This document shows positions 5,344 to 63,064 of a DNA stretch of 64,000 nucleotides, one piece after another. This DNA is from Macrostomum lignano (Eukaryota), in assembly GCA_002269645.1 (NCBI GenBank), contig NIVC01000933.1, positions 62,001 through 126,000 on the forward strand, in the 5' to 3' direction. The notes beneath the pieces were generated by a model. It was not told where the DNA came from, made no database searches, and saw only the letters and a program-made list of their open reading frames with translations. The position numbers were made by a program, and so were the translations under genes. Each line of letters begins with the position of its first letter. The stretch's first letter is position 1.

Positions 5344-8312
5344 TCAGATTTGGGTCGATTCGACTTCACTTCCAAGTTTGGCGTCCGCTGTTACACCCTG
5401 ACTGCTGCTGTCATTGTCCTGCTGCAGGTCAGAGTTGGCGCTGAAAAATAAGTATGCTATTTCTAGCAGTTCGAACAGAGTGAGCACGCACATGCCGAGC
5501 CAGAGACCGCACACGCCACCGATCTGATTGGGGGAGAAGAATTGAGTTCGATTGAGCTGCTGACGTGCCAGCCCTCATTGGAGCAGAATGGATTGCTAAT
5601 CTATAGCCATATCTGCTGGGTGAAGGTACAGAATGGATTGCTAATCTATAGCCATATCTGCTGGATGAAGGAACAGAATGGATTGCTAATCTATAGCCAT
5701 ATCTGCTGGGTGAAGGAACAGAATGGATTGCTAATCTATAGCCATATCTGCTGGGTGAAGGAACAGAATGGATTGCTAATCTATAGCCATATCTGCTGGG
5801 TGAAGGAACAGAATGGATTGCTAATCTATAGCCATATCTGCTGGGTGAAGGAACAGAATGGATTGCTAATCTATAGCCATATCTGCTGGGTGAAGGTACA
5901 GAATGGATTGCTAATCTATAGCCATATCTGCTGGGTGAAGGAACAGAATGGATTGCTAATCTATAGCCATATCTGCTGGGTGAAGGAACAGAATGGATTG
6001 CTAATCTATAGCCATATCTGCTGGACGAAGGAACAGAATGGATTGCTAATCTGTAGCCGTATCTGCTGGATGAAGGAACAGAATGGATTGCTAAAGTATA
6101 TCCCATATTCATAAAAAATATAAAATTTGAAACTCGCCTCAGATAGGGCCTCGGGATAGAGAAAGCTGGGGTGCTCCTGTATAAGCTTGGACTTTGTCTT
6201 CATTAACCTGATGTTTAGTCTCAGCAGGTTCGATGTTAGCCTTGTGTTATTAACCAGTCTCCAGCTGCTCCGGCTGAATTTCCCTGCACCATGAAAAAGC
6301 TGCTGGAGTGTCGCTGTCTGTCTGCTGACGATTTTGTCTTTTCCAACGAGCCGGACAATGTCTGGATCAGAAAAGTTCAAAATAGAGTGGTGCTCGCCGT
6401 CACCTGGCAGCAGGTCTGTGCGCTCGTACAGCGTCTCCAACACGTATTTGTTAACTACGCTAGGTAGGTCCTCAGTTTTCGGCCACTCATACACGTTGTT
6501 GAAGAAGTCTAACTTAGCTGACCTGCACGGCTCGAACTTCGAGTACTTTCTCAACAGTTGATACGTGTCCTTGTCGACTTCCGCTACCACTCTGTCGTGA
6601 CAGTTGATCCGTTGCATGACCTCCTTCGTGGGGGTTCGCTTCACCGAATCCGGCACGTGATAGCACAAGGTCTCCATGCCGGATTCGAATGGATACTTGT
6701 GCGAGTAGCAGCCGCACTGACTCATCAGTTCTTCCTGCTTTTTCTGAATCACCTGCTCGTCCTGCTGTTTATCGTAGCTGCGATATTCGAGTTTGCCCCG
6801 ATTGTCAAAGTTTGTGACGTAGCGGACCTGCTCGAAGGGCTTCTTGATGCAATCCGATACGCCGAGTCTTTGCTGACGAATGACAAACATCTGGCCGATG
6901 TTAACCGCAGCAGACACGCCCGCCTCGAACTCGAGACTATCCAAGCCTGAAAGTGCGGAGCGTGTTGTGCAAGCGTGAGTGCACTCTATAAAGAGTTGCC
7001 ATACTACTATCGAGAGTGTACATGTCTGGCCGATTGGAATGTCGGCTGAATGAAGAACTGAATGAAGAATATACTCGTACAAGACATCTAGTAAAGTCTA
7101 CGATTAGCCACTTGGTTGAAAATATCCCAACTTATCAACGCACGCAGACTTCAATAGATCGCGTGCCCCATCGCAGGCTATTGTAAACAATTTGTCAGCC
7201 TAAAAACTATTATTCACTCATCCAAGCGTTGGTTTAAAGCTACTTGGACTTACTTGTTGGACATTGGCTGTGTCAAGAACCTCAATAGCCACAGACTTTA
7301 TGCATGCTCTGATTAAAGCACTGCTTGTGTGTCTCTTCCCATCAAAATTTCAAAAAGTCTTATTTATTTGAAAATAGAAATGCAATCCCACCGAAAGCCG
7401 AACTAAACTTATCAAGCGAAACTTACTCATCATCGGGTGAGTTCCAGAGTCGTGCAATATCACTCGAAAGCCATTGGACTGGGTGATTATTGGCTCAGCA
7501 ATTTGGTTAAGCGATCGCCAATGCGTATTTAGAAAAAACTCTAACGAATTCCAATCGGACATGTTCTCTGAGCCGTGAATCTTAACATCGCGACCGTAAA
7601 ACTGAACAATGGTGCCTTCGAAAACAGGATGATAGAAGCTGGTGTCAGTGAACAGATCGAGTTTCAGGCCTTCGGTGCCAACCGCGACATCCCCACTGGG
7701 AGAGAAGCTGTAGCAATACCAACCATCGGGATCCCGGATCAGGCTGAAATTCCTGTGATCACACTTTTGACCCTCGTAGCTACAAGAAAGCAACGCCGAA
7801 TCGATAAACATGCCGAGGTCTCTGAAGTCCTCCGAGGCCCAGACGATCTTCATGAACTTTTCGAAGATAACAGACAGCCGATGTTTGTAAGCGATGTTGC
7901 TTTCATTTGGTTTCTGCATTCGCTCTTCTTTGAACCAGTTGTTGAAATAGGACCACTTTGTATCGAAGTACCTGTCCAAAACCTTGTCGTAGTGGATCAG
8001 CAGCGACTCACTGAATGGCTTCACCCTGCACAGCGTGATATCCGGGAACTCGGCTGGGACGGCCTCGTCCTGGATCTGAACAAAGGTGTCCATAGCGCTG
8101 TACCGCTTAATAGACATGACCGTGTGGTACACACCCGCAGTGGTGGCAGCTAGCAAGACAATAAGCCAGAACGCCCGTCGCGTCATATCCTTAGATTGGA
8201 ACAGGTGGTACAGACCGTGCAGAGACGAGTTCTTGCCGTAGATTTCCAGCACGAAATACGCTGTGCGAGCTCCGCGCCTCACCTTGGAGGCCCCTGAGGA
8301 CTTGCGGGTCAT
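5344..8312 (-). CDS. DEG/ENaC (amiloride-sensitive/ASIC-like) sodium channel subunit, 3 exons, 624 aa
   Basis: Exons 7427..8312, 6138..6946, 5344..5523 total 1875 nt and stay in frame. Motifs: pre-TM1 SSLHGL, TM1 RRAFWLIVLLAATTAGVYH, FPDITLC, GFRVILHDSGTHP, Cys-rich CGC region, TM2 ALSE|IGGVCGLWLGMCVLTLFELLE. Intron 2 is GC-AG (GAG|GCGAGT...AATCAG|ATC). Confidence 0.93.
5583..6100. repeat. 45-bp minisatellite (GAACAGAATGGATTGCTAATCTATAGCCATATCTGCTGGGTGAAG), ~11.5 copies, copy 1
   Basis: Direct reading; inside ENaC intron 5524..6137. Same family as 48984..49540. Confidence 0.97.
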
Positions 8313-8564
8313 GGCTGTAGATAATGAATGAGGCAATAAACAGAGGTTCCGTTAGGCTTCGACGGCACAATACAGATTAAGGAAAAAGGGCTGCGCACTA
8401 GTACGTATGCCATAAGTGCAAACTCTGTCTTGCTTACTGGATTGATATGGGGATGCATTCAAATCTCACGAAAGATGTACCACAGACAGTTTTGGTCAAT
8501 AATTATTTGTCTGATAGCTGATATAATATGATAATGACTGACTGTTTAGAAAATAATAGTACAT

Positions 8565-10107: not shown

Positions 10108-11350
<1,243 letters not shown>

Positions 11351-11459
11351 TTTTAGTAGACAGACAGTTTTGGGATAGTTTACAGATGATAAATTCCAAA
11401 AATCCTCAGTTAGTCGTTAGTAAACATTCAATTAAGATCCTATTCGCTCCATCCGGCAG

Positions 11460-12849
11460 GTTCGCCTGGCGCAATTACGTCAAATATTGCGCCCGTCCCT
11501 ACACGGGCAACGACCTCGATCCCATCAAGCGGGCCTGCTCCCCGGTGCCCGACGTCCTTCTCGGACCTCGCCAGCTGGTGACAGCCGTGGACGCGCTTGA
11601 CACTTTCGCTCTGATGGAAATGCACGAGGAGTTCGAGGAGGCCCGCCAGATGGTGACGGGAGGTAAGCGAGCAGCCTTGTCGAACGTCACTGTGAGCGTG
11701 TTCGAGACCTGCATCCGACTGCTCGGCGGCTACCTCGGTGCGTACAGCTTCACTCAAGACTCAAGATTGTTAGCTGAGGCGGTGGCAGTTGCTGACAGGC
11801 TGGCTGAGTCTTTCAGCGATATGAGATCTCTGAATCGCAATGACTTGGTGCTGTTAAAAAAAACCTCACCAAGACCAAATTCTACTATCGACAATGAAAC
11901 AAAACTGCTAGCAGCGACTGGAACTTTGTACCTGGAGTTCGCCTATCTGTCCCATATAACTGGTGACAAGAAGTATGAGCAGTGGGTGACAAGGAACCAT
12001 GAGCTCCTGATGAAGGCACCGAATGTACAAGGACTGTACCCGATGGAGATGACCCCAAAAGGCATGCCTTTGACCCCGGATCCTGTTTACTCAGCCGGCG
12101 GTGAGGGTGACTCATTCTACGAGTATCTGGTCAAAAAGTGTCTGTACAGCAAGAACCCGGACCCGAAATGCACCAGAGACTATACAGCAGCTCTCGATAG
12201 CATCATGAAGTGCATGACTGTACAAGTCAGTCCAGGGTCTGACCTCTTGTGCGTTGTCAACGTAAAGAAGCCTTGCAACGCAAAGCAGCAGCTCAACGCG
12301 ACTTGCACTATGGAGCACCTGACCTGCTTCTTGGGCGGCACCTACGCGCTCGCCTACATGATGAACCCGCATCGCACTGACTGGCTTGGATTTGCAGAGA
12401 GAATCACTCACACATGCTATCTGTCATATTTCCATTCTCCAATCGGCTTGGGTCCGGAGATTTTCAAGTACAATGCCACGTCGAGAAAGTTCGAAGCCGA
12501 TCCGGACAGGGACTTCTACATATTGAGACCGGAGACTATCGAGTCCATCTACTACCTGCACTACGTCACTGGGCACAAAAAGTACCGATATTGGGGAAAG
12601 AAAATCCTGCTTGTCATCAACGCCAGCACGAGAACTCCAACCGGCTTCAGCGGTGTCCACAAAATCCTGTCGAACAAAACGATCTTCAACAACACGCAAC
12701 AGTCGTTCTTCCTGGCCGAGACGCTCAAGTACTTGTACCTACTGTTTCAGCCGAATAGTCGATTATCATTGGACCAGTGGGTGCTGAGCACGGAGGCCCA
12801 CCTGTTTCCTACCGGTATAAACCCGCTGCGAAGCCGGATGCACGGATAG
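11460..12849 (+). CDS. Glycoside hydrolase family 47 (class I alpha-1,2-mannosidase) catalytic domain; single large exon, upstream exon(s) not located
   Basis: GH47 motifs FAWRNY, DALDT, VFETCIRLLGG, GDSFYEYLVK, HLTCFLGG, GLGPE, YILRPETIES, QQSFFLAETLKYLYLLF, STEAH. Likely acceptor CCGGCAG|G at 11459/11460. ORF opens at 11386 but no TM anchor is visible. Confidence 0.92.
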
Positions 12850-14036
12850 ATCTGCTGCATGTTGCTTGATCGATGCTGAATCTGATTGGTGATGGAACAA
12901 GGATGTTTGCTTAACTTAGCTCTTATAAGTCTTAACGCTCTTGCTTTTGTACGTGATCAGTTTTAAGGACGAATTGGGGTGTTCTGTCTTTTAATGTTTC
13001 TTCTAGAATCGATGCTTGTTGCAAGCGACTCTTAAAAATTAGTTAAATTTAATAATAATGCATTCTTTAGTTATAATTCATGTTTGCAGAAGACATTCAG
13101 TCCGCTCAAATGTCTCATTTCACAACAACTAATTGTTTGAAATATAAAACTTTCTGCTTTGCTTTAATTGTTATCACATTTAACTAAAATTGTCCCGCTG
13201 CTATTCGAACAAAATTCGGCGTAAAAATACTTGAAGGAACTTTTAAAGTTCATTTATTTTAACTACAATTTGCACTTCAGTTCGCTTTAAAAAGTACGTG
13301 TATACAACGTACATTTGTATTATACAGCTAATTTGACCTTCCGTGGCGAAAATTTCGCTCTCATTGAGTGCCAAGGATTTGGATCAAAGATTTAATACTT
13401 ACTTAAATGGCGGAACTAAAGAGAACTACATTAAGAGAACTGCATTAAGAACGTGTGGCAAATTACATAGACGCATCGTATCCATGAAGCCTTTCAGAAT
13501 TTTTCATGTGAACAACATTCTATTTTAGGTAATTTGAACTCCCTGTTTCCGGAAAATTCCCAAAACTCTAGAATTTTCTATAAAACTTATCTATAAATAA
13601 AAGGCACCGGGAACTGCGTACTCAAGCCTACCTCTTCCATACGAAAAACCAGCTGTTAAACAAAATTAGTGAACCAAGAACCAAGGCCGCCTTTCCGTCT
13701 CATTCATTTTAATAAGGTAGTTTAGTGTTAGGCGTCGCACTGTTGTCAGCAGTTTTTCTCGCCCTTGCCCTCGCCCTGGGTTGCTGTCTGCCGCTGGGCA
13801 GCCTCCCTCCTTTTTTCTGCCTGTTCTCTGTCGCCCCCTCTTCTCTGCTGTGGTCTGCTTTTCGTTTCGCTCCAGTCTTGAGGTCACGATTTGTGGCCTG
13901 TTTTTCCTTTTTACGTGAGCAAGTCACATGACAAGCCATACTTTCCTGGAGTCTAAAGTGCAATAAGCATGTTTACTGCGCTCGCTCGCTGGGGAATCAC
14001 GTATTCCAGAACTCCGGCTTTCTCTGAGGCGGGAGA

Positions 14037-14155
14037 TGACGTCAGTTCTAAAAATAGATACTGAGTCACGCGATCTGGTGCACACTGCCCGAGGATCCCC
14101 TGCCTTTTATAAGATCGGAGCTGGTGACGTCAGTTTTAAAAATAGATCTGAGTCA
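14037..14155. promoter_or_regulatory. Duplicated CRE + AP-1 module with an intervening TATA-like motif, within the LTR-like segment
   Basis: TGACGTCA at 14037..14044 and 14125..14132; TGAGTCA at 14062..14068 and 14149..14155, inside a ~34-bp direct repeat; TTTTATAAG at ~14105. Confidence 0.55.
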
Positions 14156-18911: not shown

Positions 18912-19878
18912 TGTTAGAGACGTACGTTTCTTATAGCACGAAAAATTATGTGACTACGCAATAATTATCGAAAATACCAATACGCAGATTGGACTTAGGC
19001 TATTAAAGTTAATTTAATAGACAATTAAAATTACAAATTGAATCCCAATGAAGGGTCATTAGAGCTGGCAAAACGCTAGTGGACAGGCTTTAGTGTTGTG
19101 AAAATTTCATAAATAAATTAAAATAGAAACATTATTTTAAGCTCTTGAAACTTTGGGTTCATTATTGTAGCCTTCAGAAGGAAATAATACAATTGTTTTG
19201 TAAAACTTTGTTTTATATTTTAGGGAGATTAACAAATGAACCCGAGAAAGTATATGAATGTATATGAAAATCATGATATTATATGATATTTTAGCTCAGC
19301 TCAGCCTCAGAGTAAATATTTGCAGCCTTTGTTACCTTGATAATTTCAGCTTTAATACTTAGTCATCGAAGATTTTTTCAAAGTCTAATGAACAACCAAT
19401 ATCTTCGTAAAGAAAATACTACATTTGTGACTGTACATGCAATTTAACATATGTTTATTACTACTACGTACGATAGGCGATAGCTATTTATTAAATGTAG
19501 AGCCTACATGTAGATTCTGACGCCTTGACTTGTGCATTTGGTTGGGTTACTAGGTAACGGGTTTGTTGATAACGGGTCACAAGGTTGGAGGAACGAAAGC
19601 ATTAATTGGTAAATCCCCCATAGCTTTTACTGGGGGGGACAAGTTCCCCCCTCCCCCCCCCTGGTGGCGACGCCCCTGGTCCATCAACCAATTAATAGTT
19701 AAGGATGGTAGAAAATGCTTTACTACACTATCTACTACATATCCATGTACATATGTACGAGTACATGTACAGCTGTACACATGTACATGCACATGTAGCT
19801 ACAGAAAAAACTGCACTGTACATGCACATGAATAAAATAGGATATTTTGAATATTTGATATACACATAAACTAACTAT

Positions 19879-22800
19879 TGTAGCGTACGCACGGTATGCT
19901 AGCCCAACGTGTACGCCCGGGCGGTCTGATTGGCTGCAGAGCGGGGTGGGAACCGCCCACCCCAATTCTAGCTCTACGCTCATAAATATAGATGTGTGCC
20001 CAGCACGGCGAGAGTGTAAGAGTTTCGGCTACACAGCAAACACGGCCTCTGTCCCAGTTACTACAATGGCGTCGCAAGAACCGAACCCTTGAAATCATGA
20101 CTCAGCAAATCACACTCACGCCACCCGGCCCGTTTACAATCGATAGTGATTGCCACTCCACTGCATAGCGCTGGACTGCATGGACTCGTCGCTTCGCCAC
20201 GTACCTCAATGCAGCTGGAATTACTGACAAGGTCCAAGGGCAGCAGCTGCTGCTGTACGCCGCAGGAGAGGAGCTGCAGGCTGTTGTCGAAGAGAACGCG
20301 ATTGTCTCTGGAGAGGACCACAACAGCGTCGCGGAAAACATCCAGGCGTACTGGGACGGAAAAAAAAAACATTGTGTTCCTGCGTTTCAAGTTTGAGACC
20401 TGCAGACGACAGCAGCCTGGCGAGCCGATCGACCAGTGGTATCAGCGTCTGCGCAAGGCGGCGGAGCCGTGCGAGTTCGGGACCCTCATAGAGACTCGCT
20501 GATCCGGGACAAAATCGTCGCCTATTGCGAGTCCGAGAGACTTAGGAGAGACTTCTTGCAGACCAACAACATCTCCCTGGCGAGGGCGAAAGAAGCCGCG
20601 GAGCAGCAGACCACCGCTATGGAGAGCGACAGACCCGGAGAACCGCAGCAGCTCGCAGCAGTCAGAAGAGACTGACAGCCGCCAAGACCACAGGCACCGA
20701 CGCAGCGCGTATCCTGCGATCGCTGCGGCAGATCGGGGCACCCTACGTGCACCGCAGCGCAGGGCAAGAGCTGCAGAAAGTGCGGGAAGCCGGGCCACTT
20801 CGCACGAGCCTGCAGATCCAGGCAGGACGCCCCGCAGAGCGGCGCCAACGCCGTCGCAACGCTGCAAGGCGGGACCAGCTACCAGAAGGTGGACGACCCG
20901 GACTCCGGCGTATTCGAAGTCGACCAGGGTGAGCAGTCGGCCCACACAGTAGCCGAGATCAACGGCTCTAGACTCTCGGTGTTGATTGACAGCGGCGCGG
21001 CTCGAAATGTAATCAACCGGGCCCCGTTCGAGAGCCTGAGACAGCGGCCACCTGCAGACCACCTCGGACAGGCTGTTCGCGTACGGGTCGGACCAGCCGA
21101 TGCATCTGCTGGGCAAGGCGGCGATGGCTGTCCGCATTTTCGGTCGGCAGGCAGTCGCCACGTTCCAAGTTGTCGAAGGGAGAGCCATCACCATCATCGG
21201 CAGGCAGATAGCCACTCAGATGGACATCCTGCGTGTAGGACCACCACCGACTGCCGGCCAGCAGGTGCTGCAGGTCGCTGAAGCGGAGGCGGCGGTCGAC
21301 ACCCTCCTCAGCGGCACGAGATCCAGCGGAATACCTCAAGAACACGTAGAGTACATTGGCAGGGTACTGCGCAAGCACGCCAGCGTGCTCAGCGGCATTG
21401 ACTGCTTCACCGCGGGCCGCCTGTCGACATCCACCTCACCGACTGGCAGTGGGGCGCCGACCAGGCCAGAGCCTTTAAGCAGCTGAAGCGCAGCATCGCG
21501 GAGCCGACAACGCTAGCTTTCTACGACAAGCGGCTGAGCACGCAGCTGATCGTGGACGCGGGGCCGACCGGACTGGGCGCCATCCTGGCACAGGTGCAGC
21601 GCGACGGCAGCTCGAGGCCGGTCGCATACGCCAGCCGAACCCTATCCGACGTCGAGCGGCGATACTCGCAAACCGAGAAGGGGGCACTGGCCGTGAAGTT
21701 CGGCTGCCTGAAGTTCGAGTACTACCTGCATGGATCGCCCGAGTTCAGTGTGGTCTCCGATCACAAGCCGCTGACGGCCATGTTCGCGCCTGGGTCGCGG
21801 ACGCCTCCACGAGTCGAGCGAATGGCGCTGAGGATCCAGCACCTAGTGTTCAAGGTCGAGTATCAGCCGGGAGCCTCCAATGCTGCAGACGTGCTCAGCA
21901 GGCAACCCCTAAGCGCGCATGGTGGAAGTTTTGGCGAACAGCGGAGGGAGGCCTATATCAACGGGATGGCGCAGGCGGCTGTGCCGATGGCGCTGACGCT
22001 CAAGGACATCCGCAAGAGCTCTGCCAGCGACCCAGTCATCCGGGCGGCGATAGCGGCGACGCAAGGCGGCCGGTGGGATCGCTCGAACGCCGAGATACGT
22101 TCACTCCACGCGCTGCAGGGTCCTCCTTCGGCACCAGCGAATCGTTGTGCCAGCTGAGTTGCAGCAGCCAGATGCTCGAACTGGCGCACCAAGGACACCA
22201 GTGCTCACAGAAGACGATCGCGAGGCTCGCCATGAAGGTCTGGTGGCCGAGGATGGCAACTCAAGTGGAGTAATTCGTCAGTCGATGCCGCAGCTGCGCC
22301 GTCACGTCGCACACCAGCCGTCCGGGCGATGCCTCTGCAGCCGACGCCGATCCCCGCGGGCGCCTGGCTGTCGATCGGCGCCGATTTCGTGGGACCCATC
22401 AACAACAACATGCTGCTGGTGCTCGTGGACCGCTATTCGAGGTTCCCGGAGGTGCAGCTCATGCAGACGACGACGGCTGAGGCACTGTTTCCCCGCCTAC
22501 CTACGGGAGATGTTCGCTCGCTTCGGGATCCCGCAGGAGCTCGTGACAGACAATGGACCGCCCTTCTCGTCCAAGGAGTTCGGCCGGTTCCTGGCGAGCT
22601 ACGGGATCAAGCACCGCCTCATCATGCCCTACTAGCCAGCGGCCAACGGCATTACGGAGCGGCTGAACCGCTCCATCAACAAAGTCGTGCGCACAGCCAT
22701 CGAGGAGCGGCGGGCACGGACTACTTAAGTAAACGACAATTAAGTAGTCCGTGGCGGCGGGACTGGAAAGATGCTCTGGAAGAGTGGCTGCTGGCCTACA

Positions 22801-23631
22801 AGAACACGCCGCACACGGCTGCCGGGCGCGCACCAGCCGAGCTGCCGATGGGCCGGCGGCCAAACGACGTCATTCCCGCCGCCCGGCCGTCCCAGCGAGT
22901 CCGCATCAACGAGCAGCGGCTGAGAGACGCGGACGCCGGCGCCAAGGCGGCGATGAAGCAGCACGCAGACGCAAAAAGGCGACCACGGCGGCACGACGTC
23001 CAGGTCGGCGACTCGGTGCTACGACGGCGGGTCGGTGCCAGCAAGACGCAGACGCCGTTCGAGAGCGGTGCCTGGACGGTCCAGCGGGTGGCCGGCAACT
23101 CGCTGCTGCTACGCCGGGATGGCACAACCTGCTGGCGGCACTGCACGGCGGTCAAGGTCGTCAGCCCCGGCTTGGCCGACGCCGTCGCCCAGCCGCAAAC
23201 CACTGCACCGAGAGCTCCAGGCGAGGCCAACCGAGACCCACCCGCCTCCCCGGTGGCGCTGCGCCCGCACCCCCGCGCTGCTCGGGGCGGCGTGAAAATC
23301 TACAAGGACTGAATTTTGAATCCAGTGACTGAAATTAACTGACTCTTTCCTGAAATATGCGGACTAACGTTTTTTTAAATATTTTCGCTGTTGCATTCGA
23401 TTCAAGTCTTTTATTTCTTCAATGTTTAAATCTCCGTTTTTAATGCGCATCATCGGTGTTTCGAGTTTTGTATTTTCGAGTTTTGTATTTTCAAGTTACG
23501 TTTAAATCGATTTTAACCCCACCCCAATTCTAGCTCTACGCTCGTAAATATAGATGTGTGCCCAGCGCGGCGAGAGTGTAAGAGTTTCGGCTACACAGCA
23601 AACACGGCCTCTGTCCCATGCAGTTACTACA
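19879..23631 (+). mobile_element. Decayed Ty3/Gypsy LTR retrotransposon (Mag-like), RT domain deleted
   Basis: 5' LTR 19879..20065 (TGTAG...CTACA); 5'-truncated 3' LTR ~23518..23631; 5-bp TSD ACTAT (19874..19878, 23632..23636); PBS-like TGGCGTCGC at 20067. Gag double knuckle CDRCGRSGH..CRKCGKPGHFARAC; protease LIDSGA; RNase H IVDAGPTGLGAIL...YSQTEKGALA...SDHKPL; integrase AHQGH..WWP, ADFVGP, TDNGPPF, NGITERLNRS. Multiple frameshifts and stops. Confidence 0.93.
22715..22753. mobile_element. 39-bp TIR micro-element (hAT- or P-type) with 8-bp TSD, inserted in Gypsy integrase
   Basis: Perfect 14-bp TIRs CACGGACTACTTAA / TTAAGTAGTCCGTG around an 11-bp spacer; GCGGCGGG at 22707..22714 and 22754..22761. 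Removing it restores integrase ...IEERRDWKDALEEW. Confidence 0.85.
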
Positions 23632-23749
23632 ACTATAAGGTCTATAAACTAATAAAGTAAATCCATGTGTGGCTGTCACAAACAAACTGTCACCCCAAGG
23701 CTTGCTGATCCACATGCAGCCTCCTTTGTTGCACTGCCCAAAGCCTCTC

Positions 23750-24741: not shown

Positions 24742-25647
24742 ATGTCTGCCGAATTCCAAGTGGGTCTTCTTGGTTGCTTCAACGATTGCGGTAATAATCT
24801 TATTAACTATTTTACAAGTATGATTTCTTAGAAATAATCTCATTCAACTAAGCCATTCGGAAGAAGAAATCTATATACACAGAATGTTTTGTTTAATTGC
24901 ACACATTCACGTAGATTAAGACTGGGGGCTGCGATTGAGGTGGTTTAGCTGCAATGTACGCACTCGCGTTAATAGTTAATTGCTCGCGTAGATTTAGTCT
25001 AGGGCTGTGATTAAAGTGGTTGAACTGCAATGTACATACTCGGGCTAGTCAATTGTTCGCGTAGATTAAGACCATGGGGGACTTTGATTGAAGTGGTTTA
25101 GCTGCAATGTACGCAATCGCGCTAATAGTTAATTGCTCGCGTAGATTTAGTCCAGGGCTGTGATTGAAGTGGTTTAGCTGCAATTTACGCACTTGCGCTA
25201 GTCAATTGTTCGCGTAGATTAAGACCATGGGGGACTTTGATTGAAGTGGTTTAGCTGCAATGTACGCACTCGCGCTAGTCAATTGTTCGCGTAAAGTAAG
25301 GTCCGAAAGCTGGTTTGAACTGTCATGCACACTCGCACAGACCCGTTTTTTACTCGCTCATTGTAGGCCTTTGCGTCCTGACCTACTTTGTTCCTTGCTA
25401 TACTTTCGGCAAGAACGCGGAAGCCGTTGGGGAGAACTGCATCCTGTGCGGCTTCGGGATCTGCTGCGGTCTAAGCTTCATTCTGGGTCCGATCGTGCGC
25501 GGAAAAATTCGCGAGAAGCAAAATATTCCTGGCAGCTTCATCACTGACTATTGCATCTGGTTTTTCTGCGCATTCTGCGCCTTGGTGCAGGAGGCTCAGG
25601 AGGTAAAAAGCTTCGGCGGATACGGCATGGCTGTCGAGAGAGAGTAA
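24742..25647 (+). CDS. PLAC8/cornifelin-family cysteine-rich protein, paralogue A (109 aa)
   Basis: Exons 24742..24790 (MSAEFQVGLLGCFNDCG) and 25367..25647 (LCVLTYFVPCYTFGKNAE...RGKIREKQNIPGSFITDYCIWFFCAFCALVQEAQE); phase-1 GT-AG intron. Confidence 0.9.
24905..25295. repeat. ~75-bp tandem repeat with alternating A/B monomers (~153-bp dimer)
   Basis: Units starting GTAGATTAAGAC and GTAGATTTAGTC alternate as ABABA, inside the PLAC8-A intron. Confidence 0.85.
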
Positions 25648-26220: not shown

Positions 26221-26418
26221 CCATCCTGTCAGCACACAGGCAAGCCAGTCTCTGCCAAATACCCACCTTTATCTTGGCAAAGAGTCACTCTACGCTTTGG
26301 TTAAAGAATTTTGCTACATAATTAGAAGAGACATGAGTAACAGCAGCGGAGACGAAATTTAATTGTGTTGCTGACTGACTGTACACTAAATGTGCATTAG
26401 TAGCTGACTCCACTCCAG

Positions 26419-28041
<1,623 letters not shown>

Positions 28042-28316
28042 TGATATGTAGTTAAGCCCAGATCTCTGGTTAAGATCTCCATGCCCAGTTCAATGCTGGG
28101 CCAGCTCGATGGCACACGCCACCTCTTCATTACAGAAAGAAAGCAAAATTCTAAACGGGGCTTTCAGAGGCGGCCTGCATGCAGAGTCGCAGGGTTTGAG
28201 TCAGGTGAGTAAGGGACCTGACTGAGATTGTATAATATTCAAGCTCGGTTAGCCCAGGCGCTCAAAGCAGTTTAAAATTTCGACAGCCGTAAGTTTCTCG
28301 CATCTGTCTCGCAGAC

Positions 28317-30345: not shown

Positions 30346-30606
30346 GCACCTACATGTACATGAATCATGTGAAAGAACTTTAATTTAAACTGCGCTTAGC
30401 ACAGGAAAATGTAATTAAATCCAAAAACCTTTTGAACCGAGAAAAATAGAAAAGTTACCTTTGAACTACTTGACTGCACTAAACAACAAACGAGTGCAAT
30501 TGTTCATCTCAGCGGCCATTTTATCCCCAAATCCTCTTTAATTAGTGTCGTCAAAACCCCATTGGCTGAGATGCGACACCAGGACGCCAGGGCAAGAGTC
30601 TATAAA

Positions 30607-31298
30607 ATGAGCACTTTAATCAATCATGCATTGTTGCCCTGCGAGCCAACTTCTGTAATGCGATATTCAAAAATCATCATGTCTACAGCTACAGATACAA
30701 GCTTTAAAAACGTTACCATAGCAACCAGTGATCAAGTTTTAAGCGAAGTAACAGCGAATCTATTCATAGCGTGGCTAAGCGTAGCCATGGCGATTGGCGT
30801 CGTTAGCAACCTGATAGTCTTAGCAACGATTCTGGCCTCCAAGAGCTCGTCGATTCGCACTGCCAGTGGATTTGCATTCGTGGCAAGCCAGGCCATTGTG
30901 GACCTGCTGGTGCTGGTCATTGCTGCTCCCGAGATGGCAGTCTGCTTGTCGCGCGACTGTCTCGTCGAGCTGGGAGGCGGCGCTGGAATGTCAGGTTGCC
31001 AGGCTCTGGGATTCGCTGTGATGCAGCTGCTGGAGTGCAGCCTGTGCGGCACCGCTCTGCAGGCTGTCAGTCGCTACCTGCTGATTGCTGGCAGCGCTGG
31101 CGGCGGGCAGCGGACGTTCCTGAAAGTGTTCGGCAGTCGTCGGGCTCTGGCTGGTTGGCTGGCCGCGGTCTGGTTGCTGCCGGCTGGGCTTGCAGCGCCT
31201 CCCCTGCTGGGATTCGGGAGGTTCGATCTGCTTTGTGTCCTGTTTGTGTGGGGAGTTCTTAGCTGAACTACTGATGGGGAATCGCGTTGAGGGATAGC

Positions 31299-36214: not shown

Positions 36215-38848
36215 TCAAAACTCGATGAAGTCCTCCGGCTGGTCAGCGTAGAACTCGTTGGCCTCGTCCTCGAATCCGGGCATGTCGATCCCGCTGGCGG
36301 CTCGCTCGCCGTTCAAAAGCATCTGGTTCATCATGCGGTCCATGCGGTCCATCTCGCGGTTCATCTCGCGGAACACTCGTTCTGTGCCGGGCACGGTAGC
36401 AGAGGCGGCCATCACGCTAGACGGGGCCAGGTCCCACAGCTCACCGCTGGTGTAGCACATCCTGCTGCCGTCCTTGCCGACGTCGTCAGCTCGAATCCAG
36501 TACATCATGTAGAAGTTGCACATCTCGTCCTTCTGGGTAGCGCCGATGCTCACGTCCTTGTCGCCGGTGTTCTCCATGACGCACTTGGCCGCCAGCATGT
36601 CGCCAGGCCTGATGACGCCGCTGCCGTTCACCGGGTAGAACATTTGGGGCATCTGCGGATTGGCCGAACCGATGAGGCTCCAGTGGCCGTCGCGGACGCG
36701 GTAGCCGCTCACCACGCGACCGTGACTGTGCGTGTGCGTGCGGAAAGCGAACGGGTGCAGTGTGGTCTGGCCGTCGTAACTGCAGCTCGTCTCCATGTGC
36801 GTCACCGAGTGCGCCGGGATGACACCGTCAGTTAGTGAGATGTGTACACCGCCGAGTTTCGGCGACGGAGTTGTCTGGTAGGTCATTTTCACGCCGGAGT
36901 TGTCCTTCAGGCTGGGGTTCTTGACGAAATCGGAGGCCTGCGTTTGGGGATAGGTTGATTTTTTCTCATACTTGATGTCTCTCTTATCTCTGAATAGTGT
37001 TCCTCCATGATCTTTGATGCGTCCCTCTACAATCCTTGATGCGTCCCTCTACGATCTTTGATGTGTCCTTCTACGATCCTTGATGCGTCCCTCTACGATC
37101 TTTGATGTGTCCTTTTACAATCCTTGATGCGTCCCTCTACGATCTTTGATGTGTCCTTCTACAATCCTTGATGCGTCCCTCTACGATCTTTGATGTGTCC
37201 TTCTACGATCTTGGATGTGTCCTTCTACGATCTTGGATGTGTCCCTCTACATCTTTGATGCGTCCCTCTACGATCATTGATGTGTCCCTCTACGATATTT
37301 GATGTGTCCTTCTACAATCCTTGATGCGTCCCTCTACGATCTTGGATGTGTCCCTTCTACGATCTTTGATGTGTCCCTCTACGATCTTGAATGTGTCCCT
37401 TCTACGATATTTGATGAGTCCCTCTACAATCCTTGATGCGTCCCTCTACGATCTTTGATGTGTCCCTCTAAGATATTTGTTGTGTCCCTCTACGATCTTT
37501 GATGTGTCCCTCTACGATCTTTGATGTGTCCCTCTACGATCTTGAGGTGTCCCTCTACGATCTTTGATGTGGCCCTCTACGATCTTGATGTGTCCCTCTA
37601 CGATCTTGATGTGTCCCTCTACGATCTTGATGTGTCCCTCTACGATCTTGATGTGTCCCCCTACGATCTTTGATGTGTCCCTCTACGATCTTGGATGTGT
37701 CCCTCTACGATCTTTGATGTGTCCCTCTACGATCTTGAATGTGTCCCTTCTACGATATTTAATGAGTCCCTCTACAATCCTTGATGCGTCCCTCTACGAT
37801 ATTTGATGTGTCCCTCTACGATCTTTGATGTGTCCCTCTACGATCTTTGATGTGTCCCTCTACGATCTTAATGTGTTTCTCTACGATCTTGGATGTGTCC
37901 CTCTACGATCTTTGATGTGTCCATCTACGATCTTGATGCGTCCCTCTACGATCTTTGATGTGTCCCTCTACGATCTTTGATGTGTCCCTCTACGATATTT
38001 GTTGTGTCCCTCTACGATCTTGATGTGTCCCTCTACGATCTTTGATGTGGCCCTCTACGATCTTGATGTGTCCCTCTACGATCTTGATGTGTCCCTCTAC
38101 GATCTTGATGTGTCCCTCTACGATCTTTGATGTGTCCCTCTACGATCTTGATGTGTCCCTCTACGATCTTGATGCGTCCCTCTACGATCTTTGATGTGTC
38201 CCTCTACGATCTTGGATGTGTCCCTCTACATCTTTGATGCGTCCCTCTACGATCTTGATAAGTTTCTTTACTCAGATTTTAATCTTTTCTCTTTGATGTG
38301 TGTCTTAACGATCTTCGACATTTGCTTTCTAACGTCGAATAACATTTCAAAAGACTCACCTTCTTATAGTGCACCTGCACGACTAGCCAGGGCAGGTCGA
38401 AGCCGGGCCCAACGCCAAAAGTCACACCGTCGGGCAGCTGCAGAGCTGGAGCGTCCATGGCGTAGGCGTAGATGATGCGGGTGTCGCTGGCGCACTGAGG
38501 CGCCTGCTTGTAGGTTTTACCGCCGGTAGCTCCCTCCGACTTGGTGAGCATCTCGCCGCAGCTCCAGACTTTCTCGGTGGCCGAGCCGGGCTCCTTGCAG
38601 GCGGTCAGGATGATGTGGTGAGCGTGTCCGGACTGATGCTGCGGATTGAAGGCCCGGATGTAGCGGTTCTTGTCCAGTTTCACAGCCGTGCACAGGTAGG
38701 TGTCCTCCTGCTTGGGCGACACGCCCGGCATCAGAAGGTCCATGACGCTGCTGTCGCTGGCGGCCGGTGCCGAAGCCACCGAGGTCAGCACCAGCGGCAT
38801 CGCCAGCAGCGAGCACACGGCCGCAATGTTCACTAGTAGAGGCGTCAT
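36215..38848 (-). CDS. PHM: Peptidylglycine alpha-hydroxylating monooxygenase (monofunctional PHM), 403 aa
   Basis: Exons 38360..38848 and 36215..36937 (phase 0). Signal peptide; DTYLC; CuH ligands AHH and VHY; CuM ligands RTHTH and DEMCNFY. Stop follows the catalytic core; no PAL domain. Confidence 0.95.
37010..38258. repeat. 22-23-bp minisatellite (TTGATGTGTCCCTCTACGATCT)
   Basis: Direct reading; fills most of the PHM intron 36938..38359. Confidence 0.96.
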
Positions 38849-40656
38849 GCGCAAGGTAATTGGCCTCTGTAATATGTTGGGCCGTGTGTGTAATGTTAGA
38901 TAAGTGCTGCAATATATAGAGTTTTATACAGCCGTATTTATCTTCAACTGTAGCGTCTTATCAGCTGACTCCATAGACAGATAGAAATGTAGATTCCTAC
39001 ATGCGCTCGCGAGATTAAAAGCTTACCTTCTAAAAACTTTATGTTCAAGTTCCGACTTCAGCAGTAGGAAACAATCGGAGCGGTAGGTGCGCGCTGTGCT
39101 CTCAAGCAGAAACCTGTACAGTCGGTTTCAGCTGAAAAATTTCGGAATAGAATTAAGCAGCGGATAAGCGAAGGGAAGGGCAACTCCTGGTGCAGCGGCT
39201 TTTGTGGATTTTGGCGGGGTTGGCTCGGGTGGAGAGGATGCTTGCACAGCGTATGCCTCTTCGACAGTGAGGAGCTCCCAGTATTGAGAGAGGGGGGAGA
39301 AGCACTGAGTGAGCTCCTTCTCCTTTGCCTCCTGCATCCCAGTCCAGCTTCCCAAATCTCTCTCCGGCCTCAGATCGATAAATTTCTCTTATCTCGGGAT
39401 GTGGGGGGGGGGGGAGAAGGGAGGAGCCGCGACTGCAGGGACTTCCGCCGACGGCGGGAGGGCAGGGACGGGGGGCGATTGACACGAACGGCCTTAGTAG
39501 CATGGGAGAACTTCGCCCGATCGGGATGGGATGGGAAGACTTGGGGATTGAGGATGAGAATGGAATGAGGAAGGCTGTTCTCCTCTCGGCTCTCTCTTTC
39601 TCTCTGCCCCTCCTCTGCGTCCCTGGGGAGCAGTTGCCACGCCAACCTTTCGGCCTCATCTCCCACAGCCTCCTCTCCTTCATCACCTAACTCTCGCCCC
39701 GTCCCGAGTGCTCCGCTCTCTCTCTCCCCCCACTCTTCCCGTGTCTCTCATCTCAGCCCAAATATGGAGAACAAAAAATGGAAAGTAATGTAACAGGAGA
39801 GGCATGGCGGGGTTCCGCCCAAAAATCTACCTAGCAACCATATAGATAATTTGCGAGGCAAGCAACGAGGATTAGAGACGAGTCGTATTTGATGTGCTCT
39901 CGGTTCTCTAGCACACGCTCATGGACTTCTAAGCCTAGAGCTTGGAGAGGAAATCTAGTATTCAAAATCATGTATTCAAGAATATTTGTTAGTCAAGACA
40001 GAAAATCAATAAGAATGAAGCCAGAAAAAAGCCCAAGGAGTTTGAAAGTTCTAGGAATCTGGCGATGCTCTAGTCTAACTATCATGGTGTACTAAAATTA
40101 GACTCTGGAAAGGGTTCTCTTCATATTTCTATTCCGAAATGCTACCCGAAAAGACCCCGATCCCGAATCATAGAATTTCTTGACCTGGAGTTGTCCAGCG
40201 CAAAGAATTAGCTTTTGAAAACCCTCTTTGAAAGGTTCTAAAGATGAAACCAGCTAATTACAACTATATAAGTTGGCTAAGCGGGACACAGAAAAATGAA
40301 ATAAAATGAATATGATTTATGATTTTGTAGAAAAAAATCTTTGAAGAAGTAATAAGTTTCGTAGAAAAAATTAAACAAAAAACAATACAAAATTATAAGT
40401 GAACAAAGGATGTAGGCAACATCGCAACAATAATATCACAGTAATATCACAAAAAATAGAAAATAAAACTCGATAAATTTTTCTACAGTTGCTACTTACA
40501 GTAAGCAGAATGAATATCTTTAATACCAACAAGAACGCAAAAAAGTGCTGCATAGGTATTCAACTCACCAAAATCGCATGCCGCAAACTAAAAGTACATT
40601 TTATCACCTTTATTAAAAATATAATCGATCGGTCCAATTTTCTGACCTTAGGAATA

Positions 40657-43600
40657 TTACAGCTCGCTTTCCTGTAACTCAGGTGTTATCTCTTCATACC
40701 CGCCGCCAGCTTGCCTTTCATTTTCGGCTTCGTTTGAAGTTGCCGCCGCAGACGCCGCCGCCAACTCTTGATCGTTTGAAGTTGCCGCCGCAGACGCCGC
40801 CGCCAACTCTTGATCGTTTGAAGTTGCCGCCGCCCGATGCTCCACAAGCCGTTTCGGCGGCAGCGGCGGCGCCCTGAACACTGGCGGCGACTCGCGACCG
40901 ATCACGTTGTTGTAGGTGTCCTCATTGCCGTTTCTAGGCAGCGACTGCACCTGATTTATTATGACAGTATCACTAGTAATCTTAGGTCCCGTTGGCAACA
41001 AATAAAGCTAAAATCTCTTCTATAAAAAAGTTTTTAACGCAAGAAGCCTTGTAAAATCTCCATTGTTGTTTCTTAGAAATTAGAAAAGGCGTCAAGTTGG
41101 CTCGTATCTTGTCTAAGACATCCGCATCTCTATTGAGCCATGGCATCTCAGCAACTCCCCATTGAGCCATGGAATCTCAGCAACTCCCCATTGAGCCATG
41201 GCATCTCAGCAACTCCCCATTGAGCCATGGCATCTCAGCAACTCCCCATTGAGCCAATTGGCAGCTCAGCAACTCCCCATTGAATCAATTGGCATCTCAG
41301 CAACTCCCCATTGAGCCATGGCATCTCAGCAACTCCCCATTGAGCCAATTGGCAGCTCAGCAACTCCCCATTGAGCCAATTGGCAGCTCAGCAACTCCCC
41401 GTTGTGAGCCAATTGGCAGCTCAGCAACTCCCCATTGAGCCATTGAGCCATGGCATCTCAGCAACTCCCCATTGAGCCAATTGGCAGCTCAGCAACTCCC
41501 CATTGAGCCAATTGGCAGCTCAGCAACTCCCCGTTGTGAGCCAATTGGCAGCTCAGCAACTCCCCATTGAGCCATTGAGCCATGGCATCTCAGCAACTCC
41601 CCATTGAGCCAATTGGCAGCTCAGCAACTCCCCATTGAGCCAATTGGCAGCTCAGCAACTCCCCGTTGTGAGCCAATTGGCAGCTCAGCAACTCCCCATT
41701 GAGCCATTGAGCCATGGCATCTCAGCAACTCCCCATTGAGCCATTGAGCCATGGCATCTCAGCAACTCCCCATTGAGCCATTGAGCCATGGCATCTCAGC
41801 AACTCCCCATTGAGTCATTGAGCCATGGCATCTCAGCAACTCCCCATTGAGCCATTGAGCCATGGCATCTCAGCAACTCCCCATTGAGCCATTGAGCCAT
41901 GGCATCTCAGCAACTCCCCATTGAGCCATGGCATCTCAGCAACTCCCCATTGAGCCAATTGGCAGCTCAGCAACTCCCATTGAGCCAATTGGCATCTCAG
42001 CAACTCCCCATTGAGCCATTGAGCCATGGCATCTCAGCAACTCCCCATTGAGCCATTGAGCCATGGCATCTCAGCAACTCCCCATTGAGCCATTGAGCCA
42101 TGGCATCTCAGCAACTCTCCATTGAGCCATTGAGCCATGGCATCTCAGCAACTCCCCATTGAGCCATTGAGCCATGGCATCTCAGCAACTCCCCATTGAG
42201 CCAATTGGCAGCTCAGCAATTAAACCTCGAAGCTCTCACAAGAATTTGGTTACTTGCTCAACTATCTAATTTGTTCTGGGCTAAGTGAGACTCAGTCAAA
42301 TCAAAACACAAACCTTGGCATATTGCGCCTCAGCGTCCTCATACGGACAATCCGCTCCAGAACCGCTGTGCAAGCCGGCAACGGAGTAAGCGTACGAGGC
42401 ATTGTCAATGCTGATCGCTGACGAGTGCCCGGTTCGGGTCGATTGAGTCAGATGGTCAACGCTACGACCCTCGGCGGCTTGGTGACGACGGCTCCTGATC
42501 AACCGGTAAGCAAAGAAGACCACCACGGCAGCAATGGCCAGCAGCAGAGCGGGCACAAGCAGCCCAACCAGCAATCGGTTGTTATTGGCAGCTGACAGTT
42601 CCGCTTCCGTCTGGTAGCGCGAGGTGCAATTGACACCGGACCAGCCCATGGTGCACAGACAGGTGAAACTGCCGTGCAGGTTGCGGCATACCTGACTGCC
42701 GTCGGTTTTGCAGGGTCCGTCTGTACTGGCTGAGCACTCGTCGATGTCCTGCTCACAACGGGGTCCGCGAAATCCTTTTGCGCACTGGCAGGTGAAGTTA
42801 CCTGAGAAAGAAATTGATGCTTGATCTGAATGGCAAGAAGTTTCATCTAAGGTACTTTTTCCGAGACTGTTGCAACACTTTGCAGGTGATTCTGAGGCTA
42901 CATGTTTCATGTTGTTGCATCGACTTGCGGGAGGTTTCTGAGGCTACATGTTTCATGTTGTTGCATCGACTTGCAGGAGGTTTCTGAGGCTACATGTTTC
43001 ATGTTGTTGCATCGACTTGCGGGAGGTTTCTGAGGCTACATGTTTCATGTTGTTGCATCGACTTGCGGGAGGTTTCTGAGGCCACATGTTTCATGTTGTT
43101 GCATCGACTTGCGGGAGGTTTCTGAGGCCACATGTTTCATGTTGTTGCATCGACTTGCGGGAGGTTTCTGAGGCCACATGGTGAATGATTGTTGTACCAT
43201 TCTGAGCCTATATGCTACACTACCTTCGTATGTACATGCATTTAAGATCTAGATTTCATCAGGTTTGCATTAGCCTACCTGGAGGCGAGTTCACACAGGT
43301 GCCACCATTGAAGCAAGCGTTGGTGAGCTTGCATTCGTCAACATCCTCAGTGCAGTTTTTTCCCGTCCATCCAGCCAAGCAGTGGCAGCTGTAGGTGCCG
43401 AACTGGTTGCGACAGGCGCTGGCATGTTGGCAAACTGGCGGCGAGGCCGCGCACTCGTCGATGTCCGACTCGCAGAAGGTGCCGTTGAACCCGGGGGTGC
43501 AGCTGCAACCTCCGGCGCCTGTGCCGGGAATGCAGGTACCGTTGTTGCGACACGGAGTATCTAGCGAGTCGCAGGCTGACAGTTTTGTCTCGCATGTTGG

Positions 43601-52942: not shown

Positions 52943-63064
<10,122 letters not shown>

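What the first reader, a model, noticed from the sequence alone, without database searches (positions are those of the whole stretch)
22707..22761. A 39-bp complete TIR element with an 8-bp target duplication, close to the minimal possible transposon
Seen: CACGGACTACTTAA-gtaaacgacaa-TTAAGTAGTCCGTG flanked by GCGGCGGG on both sides. It is AT-rich within GC-rich integrase sequence, and excising it plus one TSD restores IEERRDW. Established: 8-bp TSDs typify hAT and P superfamilies, and CACGG fits the CANRG terminus of P-type elements. Inference: either an ultra-short MITE mobilised as a 39-mer or an abortive-gap-repair remnant of a larger element.
Basis: partly seen in the sequence, partly recalled or inferred. 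Interest (0 to 1): 0.72.

Follow-up and report, generated by a model that had tools for sequence, protein, structure and literature searches.

The report
Transposon excision scar in dead retroelement
A 39-base palindromic insert flanked by an 8-base duplication, sitting in a decayed Gypsy-type retrotransposon of a Macrostomum flatworm, is real, and is most likely the ordinary scar left when a larger cut-and-paste transposon jumped out, not a working "minimal transposon".

Summary
GCGGCGGG (22707-22714) is followed by CACGGACTACTTAA-GTAAACGACAA-TTAAGTAGTCCGTG (22715-22753) and then GCGGCGGG (22754-22761). It is the only TIR+TSD structure of its kind in the window.

The host is a broken, RT-less Ty3/Gypsy LTR element (19879-23631, 5-bp TSD ACTAT). 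That element is absent from the homologous Macrostomum lignano locus. An intact relative (Logan unitig L001) reads ...AIDERK|DWKAAL... straight across the site, and the window has exactly 47 extra bases (39 + 8). So a TIR element did insert here.

I found no second copy of the TIR in the window, in 161 kb of fetched Macrostomum loci, or in the metagenome, prokaryote and viral collections. The rest of the Macrostomum genome could not be searched.

The layout is TSD, up to 17 nt of one end, a few filler bases, up to 17 nt of the other end, TSD (17+5+17 = 39). This matches experimentally sequenced P-element excision junctions. The GC-rich target fits P better than hAT.

Best reading: an immobile excision or failed-repair scar of a larger 8-bp-TSD, probably P-like, transposon. 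A mobile 39-mer is unsupported but not excluded. Ordinary; low interest.

The parts
22707..22714 (.). Left copy of the 8-bp target-site duplication, GCGGCGGG
   Evidence: It is identical to 22754-22761. The target sequence occurs only once in the restored reading frame (..GAG CGG CGG GAC..).
22715..22728 (+). Left terminal inverted repeat, CACGGACTACTTAA (14 bp)
   Evidence: It is perfectly complementary to 22740-22753.
22729..22739 (.). 11-bp asymmetric centre, GTAAACGACAA. Under the footprint model it is bases 15-17 of the left end (GTA), 5 filler bases (AACGA) and bases 17-15 of the right end (CAA).
   Evidence: One search gives the sequence; the partition is inference. A 7-mer, AAACGAC, recurs 108 bp downstream at 22862, but that is not significant (p about 0.14).
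22740..22753 (-). Right terminal inverted repeat, TTAAGTAGTCCGTG
22754..22761 (.). Right copy of the 8-bp target-site duplication, GCGGCGGG
19879..23631 (+). Host: a degenerate Ty3/Gypsy-type LTR retrotransposon (TGTAG...CTACA). It has a gag CCHC knuckle, protease, RNase H and integrase, but no RT domain. It carries several frameshifts and a stop in the PY*PAANG motif. It is flanked by a 5-bp TSD, ACTAT (19874-19878 and 23632-23636).
   Evidence: Three-frame translation. Pfam RT_RNaseH and Asp_protease hits. The direct repeat 19956-20056 / 23518-23618 is 98% identical. The whole element is absent from M. lignano locus L002, which carries a clean unoccupied target AACTAT|AAGG.

Best explanation
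The 39 bp are an immobile scar, not a working element.

Proposed sequence of events:
1. A larger cut-and-paste DNA transposon with 14-bp TIRs (CACGGACTACTTAA) inserted into the integrase-coding part of an already dead Ty3/Gypsy copy. This duplicated the 8-bp target GCGGCGGG. (Shown: TIRs, TSD and an empty site in relatives.)
2. The element later excised, or was lost during failed gap repair.
3. The break was closed by end joining. Both TSD copies, the outermost bases of each transposon end and a few filler bases were kept. (Inferred.)

The most likely parent is a P-like (THAP9-type) element. Its transposase cuts 17 nt inside each end, so up to 17 nt per end remain on the donor flanks. On that reading 39 = 17 (CACGGACTACTTAAGTA) + 5 filler (AACGA) + 17 (CAATTAAGTAGTCCGTG).

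The scar does nothing today except add a +2 frameshift to a pseudogene.

My confidence that it is an in-situ remnant of a larger 8-bp-TSD element is about 0.7. My confidence that the parent was specifically P-like and the scar a 17-nt-overhang end-joining product is about 0.45. The confidence field gives the broad claim.
For: (1) A real insertion with an empty site.
- The intact relative L001 (gag-PR-RT-RH-IN; circular unitig) reads ...NKVVRAAIDERK|DWKAAL...
- The DNA alignment shows exactly 47 extra bp in the window.
- Four relatives are colinear, with no gap at the site.

(2) The architecture matches sequenced P{wa} excision junctions in Drosophila. One example is acccagac-CATGATGAAATAACATA-TATACCG-TATGTTATTTCATCATG-acccagac, which is 8 + 17 + 7 + 17 + 8. 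Fillers in those tables range from 0 to more than 40 nt (PMC2895639 tables). The 17-nt staggered cut and the 8-bp TSD are established for P elements (PMC7776569).

(3) Short TIRs are normal for P-type elements. Zebrafish Pdre2 has 13-bp TIRs and an 8-bp TSD.

(4) The GC-rich target GCGGCGGG fits the GC-rich P preference (GGCCAGAC / GTCCGGAC core). It does not fit the hAT consensus NTNNNNAN.

(5) In hAT elements and in the MULE Muta1 (PMC5499845 as listed, plus my own knowledge) excision forms hairpins on the flanking DNA. Their end-joining footprints therefore do not normally retain TIR bases.

(6) Transposons with 8-bp TSDs and CAYGG ends do live in Macrostomum. L004:1099-1469 is a 371-bp foldback MITE with ends CATGGATGAATGAATA and TSD GTTAATGG. 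It shares 9 of 14 terminal bases with this TIR, and its end resembles the Drosophila P end.

(7) No second copy of the 39-mer or its TIR was found anywhere I could search.
Against: - No parent element or transposase with this TIR was found, so the superfamily rests on TSD length, target composition and layout alone.
- 39 bp exceeds 2 x 17 = 34, so 5 filler bases must be assumed. No significant template for them was found.
- The eukaryotic genome itself could not be searched, so a multi-copy 39-mer family is not excluded.
- The window sequence could not be checked against reads.
- An 8-bp TSD also occurs in hAT, and (my own knowledge) in some MULEs, Merlin and Zisupton.
Confidence: 0.7

Rival explanations
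1. Mobile ultra-short MITE. The 39-mer itself was excised from elsewhere and integrated here by a transposase acting in trans. On this reading it is a complete, minimal non-autonomous element.
For: It has perfect 14-bp TIRs and a perfect 8-bp TSD. TIR-spacer-TIR MITEs do exist: Made1 is 2 x 37 bp of TIR plus 6 bp, 80 bp in total (PMC1784062). The genome could not be searched, so copy number is unknown.
Against: No second copy was found in 64 kb of window plus 161 kb of Macrostomum loci, nor in the public collections; this is weak evidence because the sample is small. At 39 bp it is half the size of Made1, the smallest MITE I know of. P elements carry internal transposase-binding sites and subterminal repeats outside the terminal repeat, for which 39 bp has no room (PMC7776569). 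Pairing two ends that lie 11 bp apart on stiff duplex DNA is physically implausible (inference).
Confidence: 0.08
2. In-situ remnant of a transposon that is not P-like (hAT, MULE, Merlin, Zisupton or another 8-bp-TSD family). It would have been produced by abortive gap repair or internal deletion that removed all but about 39 bp, rather than by joining of 17-nt overhangs.
For: An 8-bp TSD is typical of hAT. Abortive gap repair is the accepted origin of Ds-type deletion derivatives (Rubin and Levy 1997, cited in PMC3878927). The 11-bp centre could simply be subterminal sequence from the two ends.
Against: The target GCGGCGGG violates NTNNNNAN at both diagnostic positions. The terminus CACGG has C at position 3, where hAT ends have a purine (YARNG; my own knowledge). 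Deletion derivatives this small are not described. The size falls in the 34-45 bp range of P footprints.
Confidence: 0.15
3. Not transposon-derived. Either a palindromic insertion with a flanking duplication created by error-prone break repair or replication slippage, or an assembly or sequencing artefact.
For: Polymerase-theta end joining creates templated insertions of up to tens of bases. Reads were not available to me. The window is extremely repeat-rich.
Against: The 14-mer arms have no template anywhere in the window. Snap-back synthesis would invert the flank, giving CCCGCCGC, rather than duplicating it directly (read). The insert is AT-rich foreign sequence within 59-62% G+C DNA. I do not recognise it as a common adapter or transposase mosaic end (my own knowledge). 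There is no Rfam match.
Confidence: 0.07

Closest known systems
P-element excision footprints (Drosophila P{wa} end-joining junctions; Beall & Rio 17-nt staggered cleavage)
   Same: Both 8-bp TSD copies are retained. Up to 17 nt of each inverted-repeat end is kept. A short non-parental filler sits between them. Total remnant size is roughly 34-45 bp, and the target is GC-rich.
   Different: The TIR sequence is unrelated in detail (CACGG..., against CATGATG...). The perfect inverted repeat is only 14 bp. No transposase, parent element or cleavage data exist for this family. The host is a flatworm, where I know of no described P-type elements.
Zebrafish Pdre2 / THAP9 P-like transposons
   Same: Short TIRs (13 bp, against 14 bp here) and an 8-bp TSD. 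Internally deleted copies exist.
   Different: Pdre copies keep 12-bp subterminal repeats and hundreds of bp of internal sequence. The 39-mer has neither. The termini differ (CATACC...).
Made1 / MiHsmar1 80-bp palindromic MITE
   Same: The TIR, tiny spacer, TIR layout forms a near-perfect hairpin.
   Different: Made1 is a Tc1/mariner derivative with a TA TSD and 37-bp TIRs that hold the whole transposase-binding site. It is twice as long. As I recall it is present in thousands of copies in the human genome; the paper read here does not give a copy number. Here only one copy is seen, with an 8-bp TSD.
hAT footprints and Ds-type abortive-gap-repair derivatives
   Same: An 8-bp TSD, and the remnant of a larger element left at the donor site.
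   Different: hAT excision hairpins the flanks, so its footprints lack TIR bases. The hAT target consensus NTNNNNAN and terminus YARNG are not met (my own knowledge).

Membership tests
Transposon excision footprint (donor-site scar) | Two copies of the TSD flank a few remaining transposon-end bases (definition in PMC3408717) | tested here: met
   8-bp repeats flank 14-bp inverted ends and an 11-bp centre.
Transposon excision footprint (donor-site scar) | The site is uninterrupted in related or ancestral sequence | tested here: met
   L001 shows exactly 47 bp fewer. P0001 and P0003 are colinear.
Transposon excision footprint (donor-site scar) | A longer parent element with the same ends exists in the genome | not testable with these tools
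   No eukaryotic genome DNA search is available. None was found in 225 kb.
P superfamily (P element / THAP9-type) | 8-bp target-site duplication | tested here: met
   reference PMC7776569.
P superfamily (P element / THAP9-type) | 17-nt staggered end cleavage, leaving up to 17 nt of each end at the donor site | tested here: inconclusive
   39 = 17+5+17 is compatible and matches the Drosophila junction tables. The cut positions cannot be read from a single scar.
P superfamily (P element / THAP9-type) | Partner element encoding a THAP-domain, GTP-binding, RNase-H-fold transposase with the same TIRs | not testable with these tools
   No transposase ORF turned up among the 10 of 49 long window ORFs (>=150 aa) scanned against Pfam. 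The genome is not searchable.
P superfamily (P element / THAP9-type) | Subterminal transposase-binding sites and internal inverted repeats, as carried by mobile copies | tested here: not met
   Only 11 bp lie between the TIRs. It is therefore not a mobile P element; at most it is a remnant of one.
hAT superfamily | 8-bp TSD matching NTNNNNAN (or nnnTAnnn, from my own knowledge) | tested here: not met
   The TSD GCGGCGGG has C at position 2 and G at position 7. The consensus is from PMC3878927.
hAT superfamily | Termini 5'-YARNG | tested here: not met
   CACGG has C at position 3. The rule is from my own knowledge and was not checked in a paper.
MITE (mobile non-autonomous TIR element) | TIRs plus TSD, with no coding capacity | tested here: met
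MITE (mobile non-autonomous TIR element) | Several to many homogeneous copies at unrelated sites, each with its own TSD | tested here: inconclusive
   Only one copy in the window plus 161 kb of loci, and none in the metagenome, prokaryote or viral collections. The sample is far too small: a bona fide 371-bp MITE is also single-copy in it.

The most novel reading that the evidence does not exclude
The 39-mer is a complete, mobilisable element. It would be the smallest eukaryotic cut-and-paste transposon known, with a transposase that needs nothing beyond a 14-bp terminal repeat and can synapse ends only 11 bp apart (for example on an extruded cruciform, or using ends from sister duplexes).
Probability: 0.07. 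Interest if true: 0.6.

Novelty: new member of a known kind. Interest (0 to 1): 0.2.

Why it matters
As a scar it matters only locally. It records that an uncharacterised DNA transposon with an 8-bp TSD and a CACGG terminus, probably P-like, was once active in a Macrostomum genome after this Gypsy copy had inserted. It also supplies a 14-bp probe for finding that family. If the parent proves to be a THAP9/P-type element, the scar would be natural evidence for a long, roughly 17-nt staggered cut outside Drosophila. Only if many 39-mers with different TSDs exist would it bear on the general question of the minimum cis-requirements for transposition.

Tried and rejected
1. Searching for other 39-mers through their translation (TDYLSKRQLSSP / TDYLIVVYLSSP) in the 5.8-billion-protein set. 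This was impossible: the query must be at least 40 aa and E at most 10.
2. Exact look-up of the window ORF that spans the insert (22329-23312). It is not on record.
3. Pattern scans for TIR-N(0-30)-TIR in the metagenome, prokaryotic-genome and viral collections, plus the left 20-mer in metagenomes. All returned zero hits. These collections do not hold flatworm genomes, so the result only rules out a widespread, vector or bacterial origin.
4. A TIR search at up to 3 mismatches in the window, L001 and L002, and at up to 2 mismatches in L001-L008. No credible copies.
5. A literature check of 'CANRG'. No transposon paper appears among the ten listed of the 44 papers that hold the term. Papers on Macrostomum transposons gave nothing on DNA transposons. 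Staveley et al. 1995 is not held.
6. Filler templated from the flanks. The best match is a 7-mer 108 bp away, p about 0.14, so I rejected it as evidence.
7. Snap-back or fold-back synthesis. Rejected because the flank is duplicated directly rather than inverted, and there is no priming microhomology (reading).
8. A piggyBac-type reading of the inner TTAA...TTAA. Rejected as a trivial consequence of palindromic arm ends.
9. A structured RNA. No Rfam hit.
10. I ran no further search on a P-transposase query. Only the best 120 hits are listed, and insect and vertebrate homologues would crowd out any flatworm hit.

A note on method: I joined longer flanks than needed (19801-22714 + 22762-23600) and printed their three-frame translation. 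That copy is RT-less and broken, and nothing else in it was altered. Afterwards I used only short stretches.

Full report
**What is there.**
- An 8-bp direct repeat, GCGGCGGG, sits at 22707-22714 and again at 22754-22761.
- Between the two copies is a 39-bp insert made of two perfectly complementary 14-bp arms (CACGGACTACTTAA and TTAAGTAGTCCGTG) around an asymmetric 11-bp centre (GTAAACGACAA).
- The repeat cannot be extended by a base on either side, so the duplication is 8 bp.
- The insert is 41% G+C, in DNA of 59-62% G+C.
- It is the only structure in the 64-kb window with perfect inverted arms of at least 10 bp and a non-palindromic 8-bp flanking repeat. My own arithmetic puts the chance expectation near 2e-7.
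- As single-stranded DNA it forms a 14-bp hairpin (-19.8 kcal/mol, z = -7.4).
- It matches no Rfam family.

**Where it sits.** The window comes from a Macrostomum flatworm.
- A GH47 mannosidase ORF (11386-12849) is 92% identical in protein to M. lignano BOX15_Mlig003946g1.
- Window DNA is 88-98% identical to M. lignano contig NIVC01001581.1 (L002) over long colinear blocks. The window is therefore an allele, a homeologue or a sister-species locus.
- The insert lies in the integrase-coding part of a Ty3/Gypsy-type LTR element, 19879-23631 (TGTAG...CTACA), flanked by a 5-bp TSD, ACTAT.
- That element has a gag zinc knuckle, protease, RNase H and integrase. It has no RT domain, and it carries several frameshifts and a stop in the conserved PY*PAANG motif.
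- The whole LTR element is missing from L002, which shows the unoccupied target ...AACTAT|AAGG....
- Its LTR-like repeats are 98% identical over 101 bp.
- So the host is a relatively young but already dead retroelement copy.

**The empty site.** The closest relative available is a 4.4-kb Logan unitig (L001, run SRR31628392).
- Its two ends overlap by 30 bases, so it represents an LTR-collapsed element.
- It encodes an uninterrupted PR-RT-RNaseH-IN polyprotein.
- Across the site it reads ...NRSINKVVRAAIDERK|DWKAALQEW..., against the window's ...NRSINKVVRTAIEERR[47 bp]DWKDALEEW...
- The DNA alignment shows exactly 47 surplus bases in the window, which is 39 + 8.
- Two more distant integrases are also gap-free at this point.
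- This establishes an insertion that duplicated its 8-bp target, which is the signature of a DDE-type cut-and-paste transposon.

**Is it a family?** I found no second copy of the TIR.
- None in the window at up to 3 mismatches.
- None in 161 kb of fetched loci, of which 157 kb are M. lignano.
- The 39-mer pattern and the left 20-mer are absent from the metagenome, prokaryote-genome and viral collections.
- These negatives are weak, because the Macrostomum genome itself cannot be searched with the tools I had.
- As a control, a clear 371-bp foldback MITE found in L004 (8-bp TSD GTTAATGG) is also single-copy in the same sample.
- Copy number therefore remains unknown.

[quoted passage not shown] How many bases remain depends on the transposase.
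- Tc1/mariner leaves 2-3 nt per end.
- piggyBac leaves nothing.
- hAT and the MULE Muta1 (PMC5499845 as listed, plus my own knowledge) form hairpins on the flanks, so they leave no TIR bases.
- P-element transposase cuts 17 nt inside each end, leaving 17-nt 3' tails of transposon sequence on the donor flanks (PMC7776569).
- Sequenced P{wa} excision junctions in Drosophila have exactly this form. One example is acccagac-CATGATGAAATAACATA-TATACCG-TATGTTATTTCATCATG-acccagac, which is 8 + 17 + 7 + 17 + 8. Fillers run from 0 to more than 40 nt (PMC2895639).

The flatworm insert can be parsed the same way: 8 + 17 (CACGGACTACTTAAGTA) + 5 (AACGA) + 17 (CAATTAAGTAGTCCGTG) + 8. That implies a parent TIR perfect for 14 bp, which is comparable to the 13-bp TIRs of zebrafish Pdre2.

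The GC-rich target agrees with the P preference and violates the hAT NTNNNNAN consensus.

I therefore read the 39-mer as an excision scar of a larger, probably P-like, element. I cannot separate pure end joining from abortive gap repair that copied a few extra bases from a sister copy. Both give an immobile in-situ remnant.

A possible template for the filler (AAACGAC, 108 bp downstream) is not significant (p about 0.14).

**Why not a mobile 39-mer.** Nothing excludes it formally, but three things count against it.
- It would be half the length of Made1 (80 bp: 2 x 37-bp TIR + 6 bp; PMC1784062), the smallest MITE I know of.
- It has no room for the subterminal binding sites that P-type elements carry.
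- It would require synapsis of two ends 11 bp apart on duplex DNA (inference).

I give it about 0.07-0.08.

**Superfamily caveats.**
The Drosophila and zebrafish P ends do not obey it.
- An 8-bp TSD is not unique to P and hAT (my own knowledge).
- In support of a local P-like lineage, the L004 MITE has CATGGATGAATGAATA ends. It shares 9 of 14 terminal bases with this TIR; my binomial estimate is p about 0.002 for that single post-hoc comparison. With one gap its end also resembles the Drosophila P end, CATGATGAAATAACATA.
- This is a lead, not a test.

**Verdict.** It is an ordinary, known kind of feature, a transposon footprint, from an uncharacterised family. It is of low general interest, but it gives a usable probe for finding that family.

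**Method note.** I built no repaired or consensus copy of the host retroelement. One search joined longer flanks than necessary and printed their translation. Later comparisons used short local stretches only.

Noticed in passing
window 19874-23636 (element 19879-23631): The host Ty3/Gypsy-type LTR element is an insertion polymorphism. It is absent from the homologous M. lignano contig NIVC01001581.1 and has a 5-bp TSD, ACTAT. It is about 60% G+C in a genome of about 45%. It lacks RT. Its right LTR shares only the last ~115 bp with the 187-bp left LTR. A possible primer-binding site, TGGCG, starts at 20067.
   Followed up: partly
L004:1099-1469 (M. lignano NIVC01000073.1): A 371-bp foldback MITE-like element. 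Its arms are about 143 bp and 96% identical, its ends are CATGGATGAATGAATA, and its 8-bp TSD GTTAATGG is non-palindromic. The end resembles the Drosophila P-element terminus and shares 9 of 14 bases with the 39-mer TIR.
   Followed up: partly
window 5580-6094 and 48984-49540: Two arrays of the same 45-bp minisatellite. Its unit matches about 31 bp of the subterminal arm of the L004 MITE at about 90% identity, which suggests a MITE-derived satellite.
   Followed up: no
whole window (e.g. 10108-11350, 26417-28046, 43852-45941, 46742-48454, 58282-59410): Tandem repeats are unusually dense: the tandem-repeat finder returned 48 rows, corresponding to roughly 30-40 distinct arrays, in 64 kb. They include kilobase-long TAGA/AGAT and GACA/TCTG tetranucleotide tracts and many 15-50-bp minisatellites. 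Many of the long 'ORFs' in the window are these repeats.
   Followed up: no
L002:4646-6213 and 10441-13087, against window 11349-14076: The M. lignano contig carries two mannosidase (GH47) copies where the window has one. This is either a tandem duplication or an assembly difference. A third, paralogous locus with the same gene order (mannosidase, 219-aa gene, PLAC8) is L004.
   Followed up: no
L001 (Logan SRR31628392 unitig, 4432 bp): The two ends of the unitig overlap by 30 bases. It is a circularly assembled, apparently intact relative of the host retroelement (77% protein identity in the integrase C-terminus). The source organism of the run is unknown to me.
   Followed up: partly
window 7350-8336(-), 11386-12849(+), 25315-25647(+), 30562-31266(+), 36215-36892(-) and 38279-38854(-), 42296-42910(-): Cellular gene fragments in the window: an amiloride-sensitive sodium channel, a GH47 alpha-mannosidase, a PLAC8-family protein, a weak (below Pfam's gathering score) rhodopsin-type GPCR match, the two domains of a copper type II monooxygenase (PHM-like), and an EGF-domain membrane protein.
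   Followed up: partly
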